Numbered from the whole stretch's first letter, positions 25,593-37,002 are shown. The stretch: DNA of 62,981 bases, filler included, from Octopus bimaculoides (GCF_001194135.2; 5 parts of 5 records of this genome joined end to end with filler, not necessarily neighbours in it); one strand, 5' to 3'. Translations and numbers: made by a program. The notes: a model not told the origin generated them from the sequence alone.

Positions 25593-25603
25593 TCACTGGT
25601 AAC
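25593..25603 (-). CDS. Candidate last exon start, (G)YQ-stop, followed by putative 3' UTR running into the gap
   Basis: Strong acceptor tttttattctttcatttttgtag. The phase-1 frame gives GT TAC CAG TGA. The other two frames stay open to the gap, so the assignment is uncertain. Confidence 0.4.
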
Positions 25604-25749
25604 CTACAAAAATGAAAGAATAAAAATGCACATAAGATCCTGATCTCTTAAGCAGTTATTTGATGCTTGGTAATTTTGAAAGTAATTACATGCTTTGCAG
25701 AAAAATAATTGAATATTAAACCATGCTTACTTAAATACTAAAATGACTG

Positions 25750-25788
<39 letters not shown>

Positions 25789-25789
25789 A

Positions 25790-26700
25790 GGTTATAAACA
25801 AAAAAGATGTGGGTGACACAACCCTTCTTTCATCTGCAGATCTTATCATGTACTCCTTAAAAGCTGACAAATGGTTTGCTGCTAGGATGAAAAGCATTAC
25901 AGATGAGCTGTCACCCTGAAATATTCCCTGTAGATAATATAATTTTGTTAGTGACTATAGTGGTAGCTCTGGTTCTTATTGATAGCTCTTGTGGACCATG
26001 ATGTTGTCAGTCCCTGAATAACAATGAATATATCATTTAGAACCTCAACAAAATGAGGTGACTCAATTATCCATAAGTAATAAGCAGAATCAAACAACTT
26101 CTTAGAGTCTAGCCATACAGTCAATAAGTTTTTGCAATGCTATTTTGCTATCTTAAAGAAGGTTGATAAGAAGCTGTTCATCCCAGCCTAAGACTCCTTT
26201 CTTTCCTGCTGCCTACTCTTCAGCCACCATACTGCTTGTTCCACAGTGGATGTGGAGGAATACATGCAAGAAGACTGTATATAATTCATATATAACCTCC
26301 AAGCATGCTATGGGCATGTAGTTTTTGGTCATATGCTCCTCGTTTTTTGCAACTAGTGTTGTCTGTGCAACTGTCTGTCAATCTAGTACATTAATTTCAG
26401 TGTTAATTGTTCCTTTGAACAGTTTTTCATAGGTTTTCCTATAGAACATGTACTTTCTGTACCAATAACTATCAGCTCTCTCCTAGATGATTTTCTGGTT
26501 TGGTAGATTTTGCAGCAACTGTCAGGGGAGTTTACAGTGTGATTCTGATGTGGGGATGAGAGCAAATTTTTCTTGGTGATGGATGCTTATTTTCATAGTT
26601 GTTTGGCACTGAAGTTTGGATAGTTGGGGTATTTTAGATCAATGAAAGATATATGAAGAGTGTAATAGATATTTTCTTGAGATGTGCAGTGTTGTGTTTT
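25790..26700 (-). mobile_element. R4/Dong-like non-LTR retrotransposon RT fragment
   Basis: TTLVAKNEEHMTKNYMPIACL, KKGVLGWDEQLLIN, QGIFQGDSSSVMLFILA; multiple stops. Confidence 0.85.
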
Positions 26701-27139
26701 GGTGATCTTTAACAAGATTAAGTTATTGGTTCTAATTGCAAGATGCTTTACAGGTTTCCATTTCTGAAGAACTTCAAGCTGAAACACATGTGAATGCATA
26801 ATGATGAAAGAATTCATGGTTGAATGTTTTCATTTTGTAAGTTCAGAAACTCATGCAGAGTTTAAACAAAGACAGGTAACAAACCAATTTAGTAACTGAG
26901 TGTCTGAGAATTTAAGTAACCAATATCAAAAAACTTAATAAGAATTTAAGCAAATTAATAAAAACTTAAATATCAAAATGTAATTCAGCCTAAAACTGCT
27001 GTGAAATGAGAAAAAATATCAAAACTATATAGTGAATGAAAAATTCTCGTTTCTTAAAGATAAATTTAGGTACATAAAATAACGAGAATGAATTAAATCT
27101 AATTCCATAAGTATTTTTAGAAATCTATAAAAAAATCCA

Positions 27140-27486
27140 AGCTTCAGCTGTTGCCAGTACCGCCTGAATGGCCTTCATAGGATTTTCGAGCGAGATCGTT
27201 GCCAGTGCCCCTGGACTGGCTCTTGTGCGGGTGGCACATAAAAGACACCATTTTGAGCGTGGCCGTTGCCAGTACCACCTGACTGGCCCTCGTGCAGGTG
27301 ACACGTAAAAGCACCCACTACACTCTCGGAGTGGTTGGTGTTAGGAAGGGCATCCAGCTGTAGAAACTCTGCCAAATTAGATTGGAGCCTGGTGTTGGCA
27401 TCCGGTTTCACCAGTCCTCAGTCAAATCGTCCAACCCATGCTAGCATGGAAAGCGGACGTTAAACGATGATGATGATGATGATGAT
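27140..27486 (+). mobile_element. RTE-type LINE/SINE 3' end with (GAT)n tail
   Basis: gttgccagt internal repeats, ccaacccatgctagcatgg, gatgat tail. Confidence 0.85.
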
Positions 27487-28201
27487 AGTGCAATGAAATA
27501 TAAGTACAAATAATTTCTTCTTTCATAAGCTTAGATTTTAGTTTACTATTACTTGCATTGTTTTATATACCAATGTTCTCCATATGGATATAATCAGATT
27601 AGAATACAAGAGAATTTAAGAAACTGTTAGTATAAGTTTAGAGTTTAGGATATTTTTGAATGTACAGTTATACTTTCAGAACATATTTGAGAGATGGTTT
27701 TCAATACATGACATCTTCATTAAGGAAATATTATGAAAGAAATAAAACCAATAAAATAGCTTGACTTTAAATACAGTATTGAATTCAAGAATAACAATAA
27801 TAACAAAATGAAAGCAGAACTTAATCATATCTCAACTATTCTGACACTATCTACTTTCAAGAAAACAAAGCATAAATGGACAGTAAGAAATTCATTTCAA
27901 AATAAATGTTTTAAGGCAATAGAGCTTACAAAAAATATGCGTATGAGCTATACTATTGTAAGGATTAATACAAGTGCACAATTATGGAATTAATATGAAT
28001 GTCTACAAGATGTAGCTGAATATATGCAGTTGAATTTTAACATTTTAATGGTTTTCTTTAAATACATGCATACATATATTATTAAGCAGCATATTCTACT
28101 CAAGGAAGAGCCAAACTTTTTACTAACTTTACCAGGACTGATTCCAATGATAAGGATGAGAAATGAATATAATTTTATTAATGGATTGCTTATATACTTA
28201 C

Positions 28202-34664: not shown

Positions 34665-35055
34665 ATGGCCTTAATCATTAACCTCACTCGTCCAATGTCC
34701 TAATTGGTAGGAAGGTAGACAAAACACAAACCCCTTCAGGTAGATGACCCTGCTCGATCTGTAGAAAAGGCATAGGTAGAAACTCCATAAGATGTACCCA
34801 GTGTAAGCTATGGACACATATGAGGTGCAGCAATATCAAAGGAAGGCTAACTAGCAAGATAGTTTTTGTATGTGGCAGATGCTCAGGAGCAATAAACACT
34901 GAAAATGTGCAGAAAACAACCTCTCCTTCATGGGACACTAAATTCTGCTTACGAAGACCTGTTGGGACAAGTGAAATCGAAATCGTAATTGAATCATATT
35001 CGATGACTGGCACCTGTGCCAGTGGAGCACTAACAGCACTGTCCGAGCATGATCA
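34665..35055 (+). mobile_element. RTE LINE fragment with PHD-like finger joined directly to its 3' UTR
   Basis: PCSICRKGIGRNSIRCTQCKLWTHMRCSNIKGRLTSKIVFVCGRC (C4HC3). Confidence 0.8.
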
Positions 35056-36235
35056 NNNNNNNNNNNNNNNNNNNNNNNNNNNNNNNNNNNNNNNNNNNNN
35101 NNNNNNNNNNNNNNNNNNNNNNNNNNNNNNNNNNNNNNNNNNNNNNNNNNNNNNNNNNNNNNNNNNNNNNNNNNNNNNNNNNNNNNNNNNNNNNNNNNNN
35201 NNNNNNNNNNNNNNNNNNNNNNNNNNNNNNNNNNNNNNNNNNNNNNNNNNNNNNNNNNNNNNNNNNNNNNNNNNNNNNNNNNNNNNNNNNNNNNNNNNNN
35301 NNNNNNNNNNNNNNNNNNNNNNNNNNNNNNNNNNNNNNNNNNNNNNNNNNNNNNNNNNNNNNNNNNNNNNNNNNNNNNNNNNNNNNNNNNNNNNNNNNNN
35401 NNNNNNNNNNNNNNNNNNNNNNNNNNNNNNNNNNNNNNNNNNNNNNNNNNNNNNNNNNNNNNNNNNNNNNNNNNNNNNNNNNNNNNNNNNNNNNNNNNNN
35501 NNNNNNNNNNNNNNNNNNNNNNNNNNNNNNNNNNNNNNNNNNNNNNNNNNNNNNNNNNNNNNNNNNNNNNNNNNNNNNNNNNNNNNNNNNNNNNNNNNNN
35601 NNNNNNNNNNNNNNNNNNNNNNNNNNNNNNNNNNNNNNNNNNNNNNNNNNNNNNNNNNNNNNNNNNNNNNNNNNNNNNNNNNNNNNNNNNNNNNNNNNNN
35701 NNNNNNNNNNNNNNNNNNNNNNNNNNNNNNNNNNNNNNNNNNNNNNNNNNNNNNNNNNNNNNNNNNNNNNNNNNNNATATGTATTTAGAAATAAAAATAT
35801 ATTTACAGTATAAAAATATGTTCAGTATATGTTCTGCATCCTCTCATTCACATATTGTGAAAAAGAAATGTATTGTCTAATAAATTTATTTGGTATGAAC
35901 AAAAGGAAACAAAGAGTAATTTTGCTTCATATGACATTTCAAAATTTGGAAAGTGGGTTCCTCAGTAAAGTGGCACCCAGAATTTTATTCTATGAGCAAA
36001 ATGCTAATAAAATGTAAAAGTAGTTCCTATTGAGAACCTGATTGCACAAAATTTACTTCACTGGGATGTAACCTCAGAATGTACTAACACTAAATTCAAT
36101 TCTATCAGTATGTAGTACAGTATTGTACTATTTCCATCACTACAATGTTTGGTGGTGAAATTACCATTAAGAGAAACCATTCACAAATATGTTTACGGCA
36201 ATAAGGATTTTTCTAAGATTACTTTCTTGTTAGAG

Positions 36236-36264
36236 TTATCCAGAAGCAGGAGTGATTTTGGATA
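36236..36264 (-). CDS. Candidate terminal exon C1, coding part (V)SKITPASG-stop
   Basis: Strong acceptor gctgttctccttcag 380 nt downstream of the B1 donor. Phase-1 reading gives 8 further codons then TAA. Identical in the second duplicate. Confidence 0.45.
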
Positions 36265-36644
36265 CTGAAGGAGAACAGCTGATCACATTAACCATTGCAA
36301 ATCTGTTCCTGTTTTTGTGTCTCATGTCTAGGCAAGTATCTACTGAATTCAATATTAGTTGTATACCTATTTGGATTATTTGCTTCACTAAAAAAATTTA
36401 AATATATGCATATGAACTGCATTAATAAGGGTAAGATAAATAAAAGTGTAAAATATGAGTTACATATGAATGTCTGCAAAAAGTTTATTGTATATGCAAT
36501 TAAATTTTAACATCTTGAAAGTTTTAGTTTAAATCATACATATATATTAAGTTGTATATTCTACTCAAAGAAAGAATGAGCCAAAATATTTGCTAACTCT
36601 TGCTCTGGATGTAAATTTTGTTAATAAATTGCTTATATACTTAC

Positions 36645-36686
36645 CAGCTGGTTTCTTTGAGACGTTAACGTAAGTACCATCCATGT
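36645..36686 (-). CDS. Microexon B1 (42 nt, phase 1-1): (N)MDGTYVNVSKKPA
   Basis: Acceptor ttttaatttcttaaag, donor G|gtaagtat. In frame with A1; YxN motif. Confidence 0.8.
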
Positions 36687-36942
36687 CTTTAAGAAATTAA
36701 AAAAAAGAATAAATAGTATGGCTATAAATAATATTTAAATTAAGACAGTTGTGTACTGATTCTACCATAATAAATACTCATGAGATAGACTCAAACACAC
36801 TCACACATATATACATGCATCTACATGCGTATTAATAGACAAAAGTTAGAGAGTGACATATTTCATAATAGTTAGCTTTCTGTCTTTTTCAAAGATAAGG
36901 TCTAAGCTCATGCTGTGTACTAAAAATATTGATTGTACTTAC

Positions 36943-37002
36943 TTCGTTGTCCCATTTCTAAATATTTTGGATCGCTCGCTTCAGCATATTGTTCTCCCAC
37001 AA
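36943..37002 (-). CDS. Microexon A1 (60 nt, phase 1-1) of an unidentified Tyr-motif receptor/adaptor tail: (V)VGEQYAEASDPKYLEMGQR
   Basis: Acceptor tttaaattttgaag, donor A|gtaagtac, open frame, YxxM motif. Paralogous exon at 31812-31871 has the same splice sites. Confidence 0.8.

What the first reader, a model, noticed from the sequence alone, without database searches (positions are those of the whole stretch)
25593..37002. Array of symmetric microexons building a modular phosphotyrosine docking tail
Seen: five minus-strand exons of 60/42/60/42/36 nt, each with a polypyrimidine-AG acceptor and a gtaagt donor, all phase 1-1. Spliced in order they read VGEQYAEASDPKYLEMGQRNMDGTYVNVSKKPAVVGEQCAETSEPKYLEMGQRNMDGTYVNISKKPADDTYANVLKKPS(GYQ*). 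Each exon carries a Tyr motif, and B1/B2/B3 keep T-Y-x-N-[VI]-x-K-K-P with several synonymous changes. Established: YxxM is the PI3K p85 SH2 consensus and YxN the Grb2 SH2 consensus (YVNV occurs in MET and LAT). Inference: this is the cytoplasmic tail of a lineage-specific receptor or transmembrane adaptor that grows by duplicating one-motif exons, any of which can be skipped in frame. It would be a splice-tunable signalling tail that ORF-based annotation barely sees.
Basis: partly seen in the sequence, partly recalled or inferred. Interest (0 to 1): 0.85.

Follow-up and report, generated by a model that had tools for sequence, protein, structure and literature searches.

The report
Octopus Ig-receptor tail of tyrosine microexons
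The five tiny exons are real: they form the 3' end of an uncharacterised Octopus bimaculoides gene (LOC106880794) from an octopus-only family of immunoglobulin-type membrane receptors, whose intracellular tails are strings of duplicated, individually skippable exons that each carry one tyrosine signalling motif. This is an extreme form of a design already known from vertebrate receptors such as PECAM-1.

Summary
Observation confirmed. Minus-strand exons of 60/42/60/42/36 nt plus a terminal GYQ-stop exon sit at the stated coordinates. None touches an N gap.

The piece is 100% identical to O. bimaculoides chromosome CM046605.1. RefSeq already models the gene (XP_052824007.1, 155 aa, tail only, skipping A2).

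Relatives occur only in Octopus species. Full-length paralogues have six or more Ig domains, one transmembrane helix and 4 to 23 of the same two units: A, ..EPKYLxM.., and B, DMDxxYVNVSKKP. Each unit is one phase-1 exon. RefSeq isoforms of three paralogues differ by exactly these 14- and 20-residue exons.

Unit content differs between three Octopus species through gains, losses and broken splice sites. Units cluster by species.

Constraint is weak overall (pN/pS about 0.7, and exon divergence equals intron divergence between the window's two copies). It is concentrated on the motif residues: Y of YxxM 42/42, Y and N of YxN 40/44 each, with almost only synonymous change at the B-unit Y and N codons.

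SH2 docking (Grb2-type YxN, p85-type YxxM) is inferred, not tested. Verdict: a new variant of a known kind, of moderate interest.

The parts
36943..37002 (-). Exon A1, 60 nt, phase 1-1. Encodes (V)VGEQYAEASDPKYLEMGQR(N) and carries YLEM (YxxM) and a poorly conserved YAEA.
   Evidence: Sequence and splice sites. Used in RefSeq XP_052824007.1 (P0007). Homologous A units.
36645..36686 (-). Exon B1, 42 nt, phase 1-1. Encodes (N)MDGTYVNVSKKPA(V) and carries YVNV (YxN).
   Evidence: Present in P0007. B-unit profile.
31812..31871 (-). Exon A2, 60 nt, phase 1-1. Encodes (V)VGEQCAETSEPKYLEMGQR(N). It has intact AG and GTAAGT, but the RefSeq model skips it.
   Evidence: Absent from P0007. The skip-A2 product equals the P0007 C-terminus.
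31515..31556 (-). Exon B2, 42 nt, phase 1-1. Encodes (N)MDGTYVNISKKPA(D) and carries YVNI (YxN).
   Evidence: Present in P0007.
28202..28237 (-). Exon B3, 36 nt, phase 1-1. Encodes (D)DTYANVLKKPS(G) and carries YANV (YxN). It is a B unit shortened by 6 nt at its 5' end relative to the O. vulgaris orthologue.
   Evidence: Orthologue at L003 14747-14788. No counterpart in O. sinensis L001.
25593..25603 (-). Coding start of the terminal exon, (G)YQ plus TGA at 25595-25593. The exon continues as 3' UTR past the piece edge. A second open frame, VTSEGLCSSDEQKEPRTFQNRM.., starts at the same acceptor.
   Evidence: The [GDS]YQ end is shared by P0001, P0004, P0005, P0017, P0023. The alternative frame is used in P0006 and P0009.
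35818..37055 (-). Upstream copy of the tandemly duplicated A-intron-B unit. Its left end is cut by gap 35056-35776.
   Evidence: Self-BLAST gives 91.3% identity over 1245 nt to 30698-31925.
30698..31925 (-). Downstream copy of the duplicated A-intron-B unit. Its flanks are collinear with the single Ab/Bb unit of O. vulgaris L003.
27384..28523 (.). Pair of inverted copies (27384-27486 and 28421-28523, 99% identical) of a dispersed repeat about 290 bp long. They bracket exon B3, and the upper copy abuts gap 28524-28533.
   Evidence: Their role in splicing or editing was not tested, and they could be an assembly edge effect.

Best explanation
The piece is the 3' part of O. bimaculoides LOC106880794. 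This gene belongs to an Octopus-restricted, clustered family of type I immunoglobulin-superfamily membrane receptors.

Shown here:
- The family's cytoplasmic tail is a disordered string of two alternating modules. Each module is encoded by one symmetric phase-1 microexon with near-identical splice flanks.
- The A module (60 nt) has the core E-P-[KR]-Y-[LV]-x-M. The B module (42 nt) has the core D-M-D-x-x-Y-V-N-[VI]-S-[KR]-K-P.
- Modules multiply and are lost by local duplication of an A-intron-B segment of about 1.2 kb, and possibly by gene conversion. As a result, closely related species and paralogues carry different numbers of them.
- Because every exon is phase 1-1, any exon can be included or skipped without changing the frame.

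Inferred, not shown:
- After receptor engagement a Src- or Syk-type kinase phosphorylates the tyrosines.
- pY-x-N sites recruit a Grb2/Drk-type SH2 adaptor, and pY-x-x-M sites recruit the p85-type PI3K regulatory subunit.
- Exon number, set by evolution and by splicing, then sets the docking valency of the tail.
For: Identity:
- The window piece is 100% identical to L004, CM046605.1.
- P0007 (XP_052824007.1) contains A0, A1, B1, B2, B3 and GYQ.

Receptor family:
- P0004, P0005, P0009 and P0016-P0024 have Ig_3 and I-set domains, a TM helix and the same units.
- O. sinensis P0023 joins Ig domains to an A0-B0-A-B-A-B-GYQ tail.
- A paralogue lies about 0.3 Mb away on the same chromosome.
- The exon map of LOC106874069 shows six phase-1 Ig exons, a TM exon, a 18-nt juxtamembrane microexon, then one exon per unit.

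Cassette use:
- Isoforms X1-X8, X1-X7 and X1-X5 of three paralogues differ by whole 14- and 20-residue units.

Turnover:
- B0 is absent in O. bimaculoides and B3 is absent in O. sinensis.
- Decayed pseudo-exons occur elsewhere in the arrays.
- Units cluster by species.

Motif constraint:
- A-unit Y14 is present in 42/42 units and M at +3 in 31/42 (L in 7).
- B-unit Y, N and P are each present in 40/44 units.
- The B-unit Y and N codons show 0 changes at codon positions 1-2 and 6 at position 3, five of them synonymous.
- Exons accumulate about 35% fewer parsimony steps per column than introns.

Motif meaning:
- YXN is a Grb2-binding motif, YVNV is the Gads/Grb2 motif of LAT, and YXXM is a p85-binding motif (PMC3342071).
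Against: - No transcript reads were examined. Use of the junctions rests on RefSeq and ENA gene models.
- For this gene the Ig and TM exons were not found within 45 kb upstream. The RefSeq N-terminus looks spurious.
- Overall constraint is weak. pN/pS is about 0.7 with no third-position excess across whole exons. Exons are no more conserved than flanking introns pairwise. The window's two copies diverge equally in exon and intron.
- Orthologous A exons in O. vulgaris and O. sinensis have lost the AG acceptor or the GT donor.
- The first tyrosine of A units (QYAE) is not conserved (18/42).
- Phosphorylation, the kinase and the SH2 partners are untested. I did not verify here that octopus has Grb2 and p85 orthologues.
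Confidence: 0.6

Rival explanations
1. At this particular locus the array is a decaying tail-only remnant of a duplicated receptor gene. The exons are still open and spliceable but no longer attached to an ectodomain, and they are drifting neutrally.
For: - No Ig or TM exon was found by tblastn anywhere in the 77-kb locus L004, including 45 kb upstream of A1.
- The RefSeq model is tail-only with a doubtful first exon.
- Exon divergence equals intron divergence between A1B1 and A2B2 and versus the orthologues.
- Splice-site losses occur in the orthologous O. vulgaris and O. sinensis A exons.
- B0 is lost in O. bimaculoides.
Against: - All six exons keep open frames and consensus AG/GTAAGT sites. 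Genuinely decayed units elsewhere have stops and broken donors.
- Juxtamembrane microexons GIKRNKE and TSSAKG exist upstream. One of them lies on the opposite strand, between assembly gaps, which points to a misoriented contig rather than a missing gene part.
- L004 contains many N gaps.
- O. sinensis P0023 and O. vulgaris P0020 link this tail type to Ig domains and a TM helix.
- Y and N codons change only synonymously.
Confidence: 0.15
2. The tyrosines act unphosphorylated as YxxPhi sorting signals (YLEM, YVNV, YATI). These would bind the AP-2 mu2 subunit, so the tail controls endocytosis and trafficking rather than SH2 docking.
For: Every conserved motif fits Y-x-x-[MVIL]. The +3 position stays hydrophobic: M/L/V/I in A units and V/I/L in most B units.
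Against: - Asn at +2 is invariant in B units (40/44) and changes only synonymously. YxxPhi does not require this, but Grb2-type SH2 binding does.
- Met is preferred at +3 in A units.
- Acidic residues sit upstream of both tyrosines, as in tyrosine-kinase substrates.
- Up to 23 copies is far more than a sorting signal needs.
Confidence: 0.1
3. Each A-B pair is a bipartite ITAM-like motif (YxxM/L-x8-YxxV/I) that recruits a Syk/Shark-type tandem-SH2 kinase.
For: The exon structure fixes the spacing between the two tyrosines at YxxPhi-x8-YxxPhi. This lies within the ITAM range, as read directly from the A1-B1 and A2-B2 peptides. A0 units read YLEL.
Against: - The +3 residues are M and V rather than the L/I of the ITAM consensus.
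- The conserved Asn at +2 is not an ITAM feature.
- A and B exons also occur unpaired (A-A-A and B-B runs) and are skipped independently in isoforms.
Confidence: 0.1
4. The pattern is a chance ORF or a repeat/transposon-derived pseudo-coding pattern, not exons.
For: The introns are full of dispersed repeats, and one O. vulgaris model (P0003) fuses a LINE-like ORF to the exons.
Against: - The exons are part of RefSeq proteins in three species.
- They are attached to Ig and TM exons in paralogues.
- The false-positive rate of the splice-and-phase scan is about 0.3-0.4 per piece.
Confidence: 0.02

Closest known systems
PECAM-1/CD31 (vertebrate IgSF receptor with a multi-exon cytoplasmic tail)
   Same: - Six-Ig type I receptor.
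- The cytoplasmic domain is encoded by a series of short exons (exons 9-16).
- Exons 10-16 are alternatively spliced.
- Tyrosines are spread over separate exons (9 and 12-15).
- A single 19-residue tyrosine exon (exon 14) changes function (PMC2132561).
   Different: - No specific sequence relationship. The best PDB hits for the octopus ectodomain are weak generic Ig matches (contactin-1, Dscam, ICAM-1).
- PECAM-1 tail exons are all different and carry ITIMs.
- The octopus tails are tandem amplifications of two exon types carrying YxxM and YxN, with 4 to 23 copies and species-specific copy number.
Transmembrane adaptors LAT / NTAL (LAB) / LAX
   Same: - Disordered tails with multiple YxN Grb2 sites: five in NTAL, and YVNV in LAT and LAX.
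- LAX also has a YxxM p85 site (PMC3342071).
- They share the logic of a multivalent SH2 docking platform.
   Different: - The adaptors have almost no ectodomain and, in LAT and NTAL, a palmitoylated CxxC. The octopus family has a large Ig ectodomain and no CxxC after the TM helix.
- There is no homology, and the motifs in the adaptors are not one-per-duplicated-exon.
Octopus 'uncharacterized protein' IgSF cluster (O. bimaculoides LOC106869178, LOC106874069, LOC106879981, LOC106874055; O. sinensis LOC115212116, LOC115212119, LOC115212249)
   Same: - Direct homologues with the same A and B units.
- The same splice flanks and the same [GDS]YQ terminal exon.
- Located on the same chromosome region.
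   Different: The window gene's model lacks the ectodomain and TM part. It also has its own unit composition: A0, A1B1, A2B2, B3.
Rapidly evolving clustered IgSF immune or allorecognition receptors with tyrosine-motif tails (KIR/LILR/CHIR; Hydractinia Alr family, PMC9546547)
   Same: - Lineage-restricted, clustered, fast-evolving IgSF genes.
- Signalling motifs in the tail, with birth-and-death dynamics.
   Different: - Those tails use ITIM/ITAM-type motifs and are not built from amplified one-motif microexons.
- This is a resemblance from the literature listing and from general knowledge. No sequence relationship was tested.

Membership tests
Octopus A/B-unit IgSF receptor family (RefSeq 'uncharacterized' LOC cluster) | Tail units homologous to A (..EPKYLxM..) and B (DMDxxYVNVSKKP) | tested here: met
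   phmmer and hmmsearch hits and unit profiles. The window's A1, A2, B1, B2 and B3 score among the best units.
Octopus A/B-unit IgSF receptor family (RefSeq 'uncharacterized' LOC cluster) | One unit per phase-1-1 microexon with shared splice flanks, and a terminal [GDS]YQ-stop exon | tested here: met
   Window exons. Paralogue exon map. Flank-only search recovers the same units.
Octopus A/B-unit IgSF receptor family (RefSeq 'uncharacterized' LOC cluster) | Ig-domain ectodomain and a single TM helix encoded upstream in the same gene | tested here: inconclusive
   Met in paralogues and in O. sinensis P0023 and O. vulgaris P0020. For the window gene, only juxtamembrane microexons were found. No Ig or TM exon was found in L004, which is riddled with gaps.
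Grb2/Drk-type SH2 docking site (pY-x-N) | Y-x-N sequence, conserved Y and N | tested here: met
   B1 has YVNV, B2 YVNI and B3 YANV. Y and N are each present in 40/44 units across the family. Changes at these codons fall only at the third position, five of six synonymous.
Grb2/Drk-type SH2 docking site (pY-x-N) | Tyrosine is phosphorylated and binds the SH2 domain | not testable with these tools
   Needs phosphoproteomics or peptide-binding assays.
PI3K p85-type SH2 docking site (pY-x-x-M) | Y-x-x-M sequence, conserved Y and M | tested here: met
   A1 and A2 have YLEM. Across the family Y is present in 42/42 units, M in 31/42 and L in 7/42. Binding was not tested.
ITIM / ITSM inhibitory receptors | [SIVL]-x-Y-x-x-[IVL] or T-x-Y-x-x-[VI] | tested here: not met
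   In the window exons, position -2 is G (GTYVNV), D (DTYANV), P (PKYLEM) or E (EQYAEA). A paralogue (P0024) does end in TIYADL.
ITAM | YxxL/I-x6-8-YxxL/I | tested here: not met
   The x8 spacing is met in A-B pairs, but the +3 residues are M and V. The units also occur unpaired.
PECAM-1 family | Sequence homology of ectodomain or tail | tested here: not met
   The PDB sequence search gave only weak generic Ig hits (E of 8e-6 or weaker; contactin-1, Dscam, ICAM-1) and no PECAM-1 hit. The resemblance is architectural only.
LAT/NTAL-type transmembrane adaptors | Very short ectodomain and a juxtamembrane CxxC palmitoylation motif | tested here: not met
   Family members have ectodomains of about 460-770 residues in the full-length models, and no CxxC after the TM helix.

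The most novel reading that the evidence does not exclude
The octopus family is a receptor with a built-in docking scaffold of tunable valency, resembling LAT or IRS. Alternating Grb2-type (YxN) and PI3K-type (YxxM) sites are each on their own cassette microexon. Splicing within a cell, and exon duplication or conversion between species, would then set how many adaptors one receptor can recruit. That number could in turn set thresholds for cooperative assemblies or condensates. The result would be a fast-evolving recognition system specific to octopuses.
Probability: 0.3. Interest if true: 0.7.

Novelty: new variant of a known kind. Interest (0 to 1): 0.5.

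Why it matters
If the motifs are used as inferred, this family gives a very clean natural example of how short linear signalling motifs are gained, lost and dosed. One motif sits on one symmetric microexon, amplified to as many as 23 copies, differing between sister species, and individually skippable.

It would also put a name on an Octopus-specific clustered IgSF receptor family that the databases currently list only as 'uncharacterized'. 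Cephalopod cell-surface recognition, whether immune or neural, is poorly understood, so this is useful.

The practical lessons for annotation are modest. The gene is already in RefSeq but is truncated, probably because of a misoriented contig. Several O. vulgaris and O. sinensis models of the family are fragmented or chimeric.

Tried and rejected
- Exon-versus-intron conservation as proof of coding. Pairwise identity of exons is no higher than that of flanking introns. pN/pS is about 0.7 with no codon-position bias over whole exons. The window's two copies diverge equally in exon and intron. This test is therefore uninformative or negative. Only the motif-codon analysis and the family-wide column counts show constraint.\n- Search for the gene's own Ig and TM exons. 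tblastn of paralogue proteins against the 77-kb O. bimaculoides locus found none.\n- Look-up of the full O. sinensis LOC115212249 locus. The gene range was too long, so no DNA was returned. Isoform P0022 was not on record.\n- Search for relatives outside Octopus. A tail query, a full-length query and an Ig+TM profile returned only Octopus proteins, two short unnamed genomic Logan contigs, and one spurious bacterial repeat protein (P0012). In one search the profile search scored only the top 8000 word-sharing candidates, so its negative result is weak.\n- Literature. No paper mentions these LOC identifiers or a cephalopod IgSF family with such tails.\n- Rfam found nothing in the piece.\n- TE or satellite origin of the exons was rejected.\n- ITIM and ITAM membership was rejected on motif grounds.

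Full report
**1. What is in the sequence**

On the minus strand I read five short exons and a terminal exon at exactly the coordinates given:
- A1, 37002-36943 (60 nt)
- B1, 36686-36645 (42 nt)
- A2, 31871-31812 (60 nt)
- B2, 31556-31515 (42 nt)
- B3, 28237-28202 (36 nt)
- a terminal exon starting at 25603, with stop TGA at 25595-25593

Each internal exon is preceded by a T-rich tract ending in AG and followed by GTAAGT. Removing any one exon leaves the frame intact.

The same splice, phase and open-frame scan finds only 2-3 spurious tyrosine-containing candidates per 77 kb per strand. About 0.3-0.4 would therefore be expected by chance in this 10.8-kb piece.

**2. Gaps**

The piece has four N runs, not three: 28524-28533, 32754-33041, 35056-35776, and an unlisted one at 37099-37198.
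- All four lie in introns. No exon or reading frame runs into a gap, so 'in frame across the gap' depends only on exon phases.
- Blocks on either side of gaps 28524 and 32754 are collinear with the O. vulgaris locus L003.
- Gap 32754-33041 sits inside about 1.8 kb of extra, repeat-derived sequence absent from L003.
- Gap 35056-35776 cuts the edge of a duplicated unit, so continuity there is unverified.
- The homologous introns of O. vulgaris and O. sinensis contain no further family exons.

**3. Whose gene it is**

The piece is 100% identical to O. bimaculoides chromosome CM046605.1 (GCA_001194135.2), at L004 55571-67500.

RefSeq already models the gene as LOC106880794, protein XP_052824007.1 (P0007, 155 aa). 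The model reads ...TSSAK / DTEDDYATISDEAY / NVERAYGISSKPST / A0 / A1 / B1 / B2 / B3 / GYQ and skips A2. The exons are therefore not invisible to annotation, although the model is tail-only.

Its first exons look spurious. A juxtamembrane microexon GIKRNKE lies on the opposite strand at about L004 8877-8895, between two assembly gaps. The next microexon, TSSAKG, is on the gene strand at 15724-15741. This pattern suggests a misoriented contig. No Ig or TM exon was found anywhere in L004, but L004 contains 40 N runs.

**4. The family**

A full-library phmmer search with an O. vulgaris tail model (P0002) returned only Octopus proteins plus one spurious bacterial repeat protein. Among the hits:
- P0004 (O. 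sinensis LOC115212116, 1220 aa), P0005 and P0009 have a leader, several Ig domains (Pfam Ig_3, I-set, C2-set_2) and one TM helix (IIGCxVG...).
- Their tails are built of the same two units and end in [GDS]YQ.

A second search, using P0004 as query, found eleven proteins including the query, all from O. bimaculoides, O. sinensis and O. vulgaris. O. sinensis P0023 joins Ig domains to an A0-B0-A-B-A-B-GYQ tail almost identical to the orthologue of the window's tail. O. vulgaris P0020 joins Ig and TM to GVKRNKETSSAKG-TEDNYATISDEAL, the start of this tail type.

A paralogue, LOC106874069, lies about 0.3 Mb from the window locus on the same chromosome. Its exon map shows six Ig exons with split codons at their borders, a TM exon, an 18-nt juxtamembrane microexon, and then one exon per tail unit. 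The tail exons share the same flanks, tttcttgaag|...|gtaagta.

The ectodomain has only weak, generic Ig similarity to solved structures (contactin-1, Dscam, ICAM-1). No paper in the searchable library mentions these genes.

**5. Cassette behaviour**

RefSeq isoforms of three O. bimaculoides paralogues differ in the tail by exactly whole units of 14 residues (B) or 20 residues (A), singly or combined, and by alternative C-termini. The three genes are LOC106869178 (X1-X7), LOC106874069 (X1-X8) and LOC106879981 (X1-X5).

In LOC106874069 the missing blocks coincide with mapped exons.

From my knowledge of the NCBI pipeline, extra isoforms are produced only with transcript support. I did not see the reads.

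**6. Evolution**

Duplication within the window:
- The A1-intron-B1 and A2-intron-B2 units are a tandem duplication of at least 1.2 kb. Identity is 91% counting gaps. At aligned positions, 7.4% of intron sites and 6.9% of exon sites differ.

Relationships between units:
- In a neighbour-joining tree the two O. bimaculoides units are each other's closest relatives, and so are the two O. sinensis units.
- This indicates lineage-specific duplication or gene conversion. I cannot tell which.

Unit content by species:
- O. bimaculoides: A0, A1B1, A2B2, B3. B0 is absent.
- O. vulgaris: A0B0, AaBa (Aa donor GT changed to AT), AbBb (Ab acceptor AG changed to TG), B3.
- O. sinensis: A0B0, AaBa, AbBb (both A acceptors are TG), no B3.
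- Clearly decayed units, with stops and broken donors, exist in paralogous arrays.

Whole-exon constraint is weak:
- Pairwise exon identity is no higher than intron identity.
- pN/pS is about 0.7 and substitutions are evenly spread over codon positions.
- Counted as parsimony steps on a tree, exons change about 35% less than introns (0.83 vs 1.30 and 1.07 vs 1.62 steps per column).

The constraint sits on the motif residues:
- Across 42 A units the second tyrosine is invariant. Met is at +3 in 31 units (Leu in 7), and the first tyrosine is kept in only 18.
- Across 44 B units, Y, N(+2) and P are each kept in 40.
- In 13 genomic B copies the Tyr and Asn codons show no change at positions 1-2 and six at position 3, five of them synonymous.
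- A search that finds units by intron flanks alone, and so is blind to coding content, recovers the same picture.

This is the signature of short linear motifs in an otherwise free-drifting disordered tail.

**7. How it most likely works**

Shown:
- The gene architecture, the modularity and the symmetric phases.
- Annotated exon skipping in paralogues.
- Unit turnover between species.
- Conservation confined to the motifs.

Inferred:
- B units (Y-V/A/I-N-V/I) match the Grb2/Gads-type pYxN site. YVNV is the motif found in LAT and LAX.
- A units (Y-L/V-x-M) match the p85 pYxxM site (PMC3342071).
- Acidic residues upstream of both tyrosines fit tyrosine-kinase substrates (general knowledge).
- I therefore favour a phosphotyrosine docking tail whose valency is set by exon number.

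Weaker rivals:
- A decaying tail-only remnant at this locus.
- Unphosphorylated YxxPhi sorting signals, which do not explain the invariant Asn.
- ITAM-like A-B pairs. The x8 spacing fits, but the +3 residues and the independence of the units do not.

ITIM and ITSM are not met in the window's exons.

**8. Comparison with known systems and verdict**

The closest known design is PECAM-1. It is an IgSF receptor whose cytoplasmic domain is encoded by short exons 9-16. Exons 10-16 are alternatively spliced, and tyrosines sit in separate exons (PMC2132561). Functionally the tail resembles the multi-YxN adaptors LAT, NTAL and LAX. It is homologous to none of these.

What is new is the tandem amplification of two one-motif exon types to 4-23 copies, with species-specific copy number, in an Octopus-restricted receptor cluster.

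The architectural interpretation is supported. The signalling function remains an inference, and the claim that annotation misses the exons is overstated.

Noticed in passing
window 37099-37198: A fourth assembly gap (100 N), 97 nt upstream of the A1 acceptor, is not in the list supplied with the finding.
   Followed up: yes
window 27384-27486 and 28421-28523: A 103-bp inverted repeat at 99% identity brackets exon B3, and its upper arm abuts gap 28524. The element (27194-27487) is a dispersed repeat about 290 bp long, with at least 9 copies in L002 at 80-92% identity. The near-identity of this one pair is odd. It could be an assembly edge artefact, a recent conversion, or a dsRNA-forming pair relevant to B3 splicing or editing.
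   Followed up: partly
window 25603-25538 (minus strand): The terminal exon has a second open frame, VTSEGLCSSDEQKEPRTFQNRM.., which runs off the piece. RefSeq models of relatives (P0006, P0009, P0015) end in this frame instead of GYQ-stop. The exon may therefore be read in two frames, depending on the phase of the preceding exon.
   Followed up: partly
L004 about 8877-8895 (minus) and 15724-15741 (plus): The juxtamembrane microexons GIKRNKE and TSSAKG of the window's gene lie on opposite strands, separated by assembly gaps. Contig 7942-14909 is probably misoriented in GCA_001194135.2, which would explain the truncated RefSeq model.
   Followed up: partly
L001 12168-12172 and 21714-21716; L003 12226-12228: The A exons of O. 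sinensis and O. vulgaris have TG where the AG acceptor should be. Even so, RefSeq protein P0001 includes both O. sinensis A exons, joined at two different TG positions. This is either non-canonical splicing with read support or a modelling artefact. It is unexplained.
   Followed up: partly
P0008 (O. vulgaris CAJ1099246.1): This gene model is a chimera. It fuses an adhesion-GPCR N-terminus (LRR, GPS, two TM helices) to tail exons of this family and then to a LINE reverse-transcriptase fragment. P0003, P0011 and P0013 also fuse tail exons to the same LINE-like ORF.
   Followed up: partly
P0024 (O. vulgaris paralogue): Its tail uses a different amplified unit, DVxxLYAKVNKP[SR]xQ[AT]D in five copies. 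It ends with NYAELEF and TIYADLIL, which are ITIM/ITSM-like. The family may therefore include inhibitory-type members.
   Followed up: no
L005 about 78127-78186 and 69387-69427; L002 76775-76819: Decayed or variant units sit inside paralogous arrays. One is an A unit with a GA donor and an in-frame stop. Another is a B-like unit without the usual acceptor. These are examples of exon death next to live units.
   Followed up: partly
L004 40096-40260: Homology to the O. sinensis A0-B0 region stops 38 nt after the A0 donor. Exon B0 (DMKISYVNVSRKPD in O. vulgaris and O. sinensis) is missing from O. bimaculoides, and no gap is present at that point.
   Followed up: yes
window 25752-25788, 28417-28441, 28534-28596, 30367-30425: Microsatellites (AGT)12, (CAT)8, (AT)31 and (TATG)15 lie in the introns. 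The (AT)n run directly abuts gap 28524-28533.
   Followed up: no
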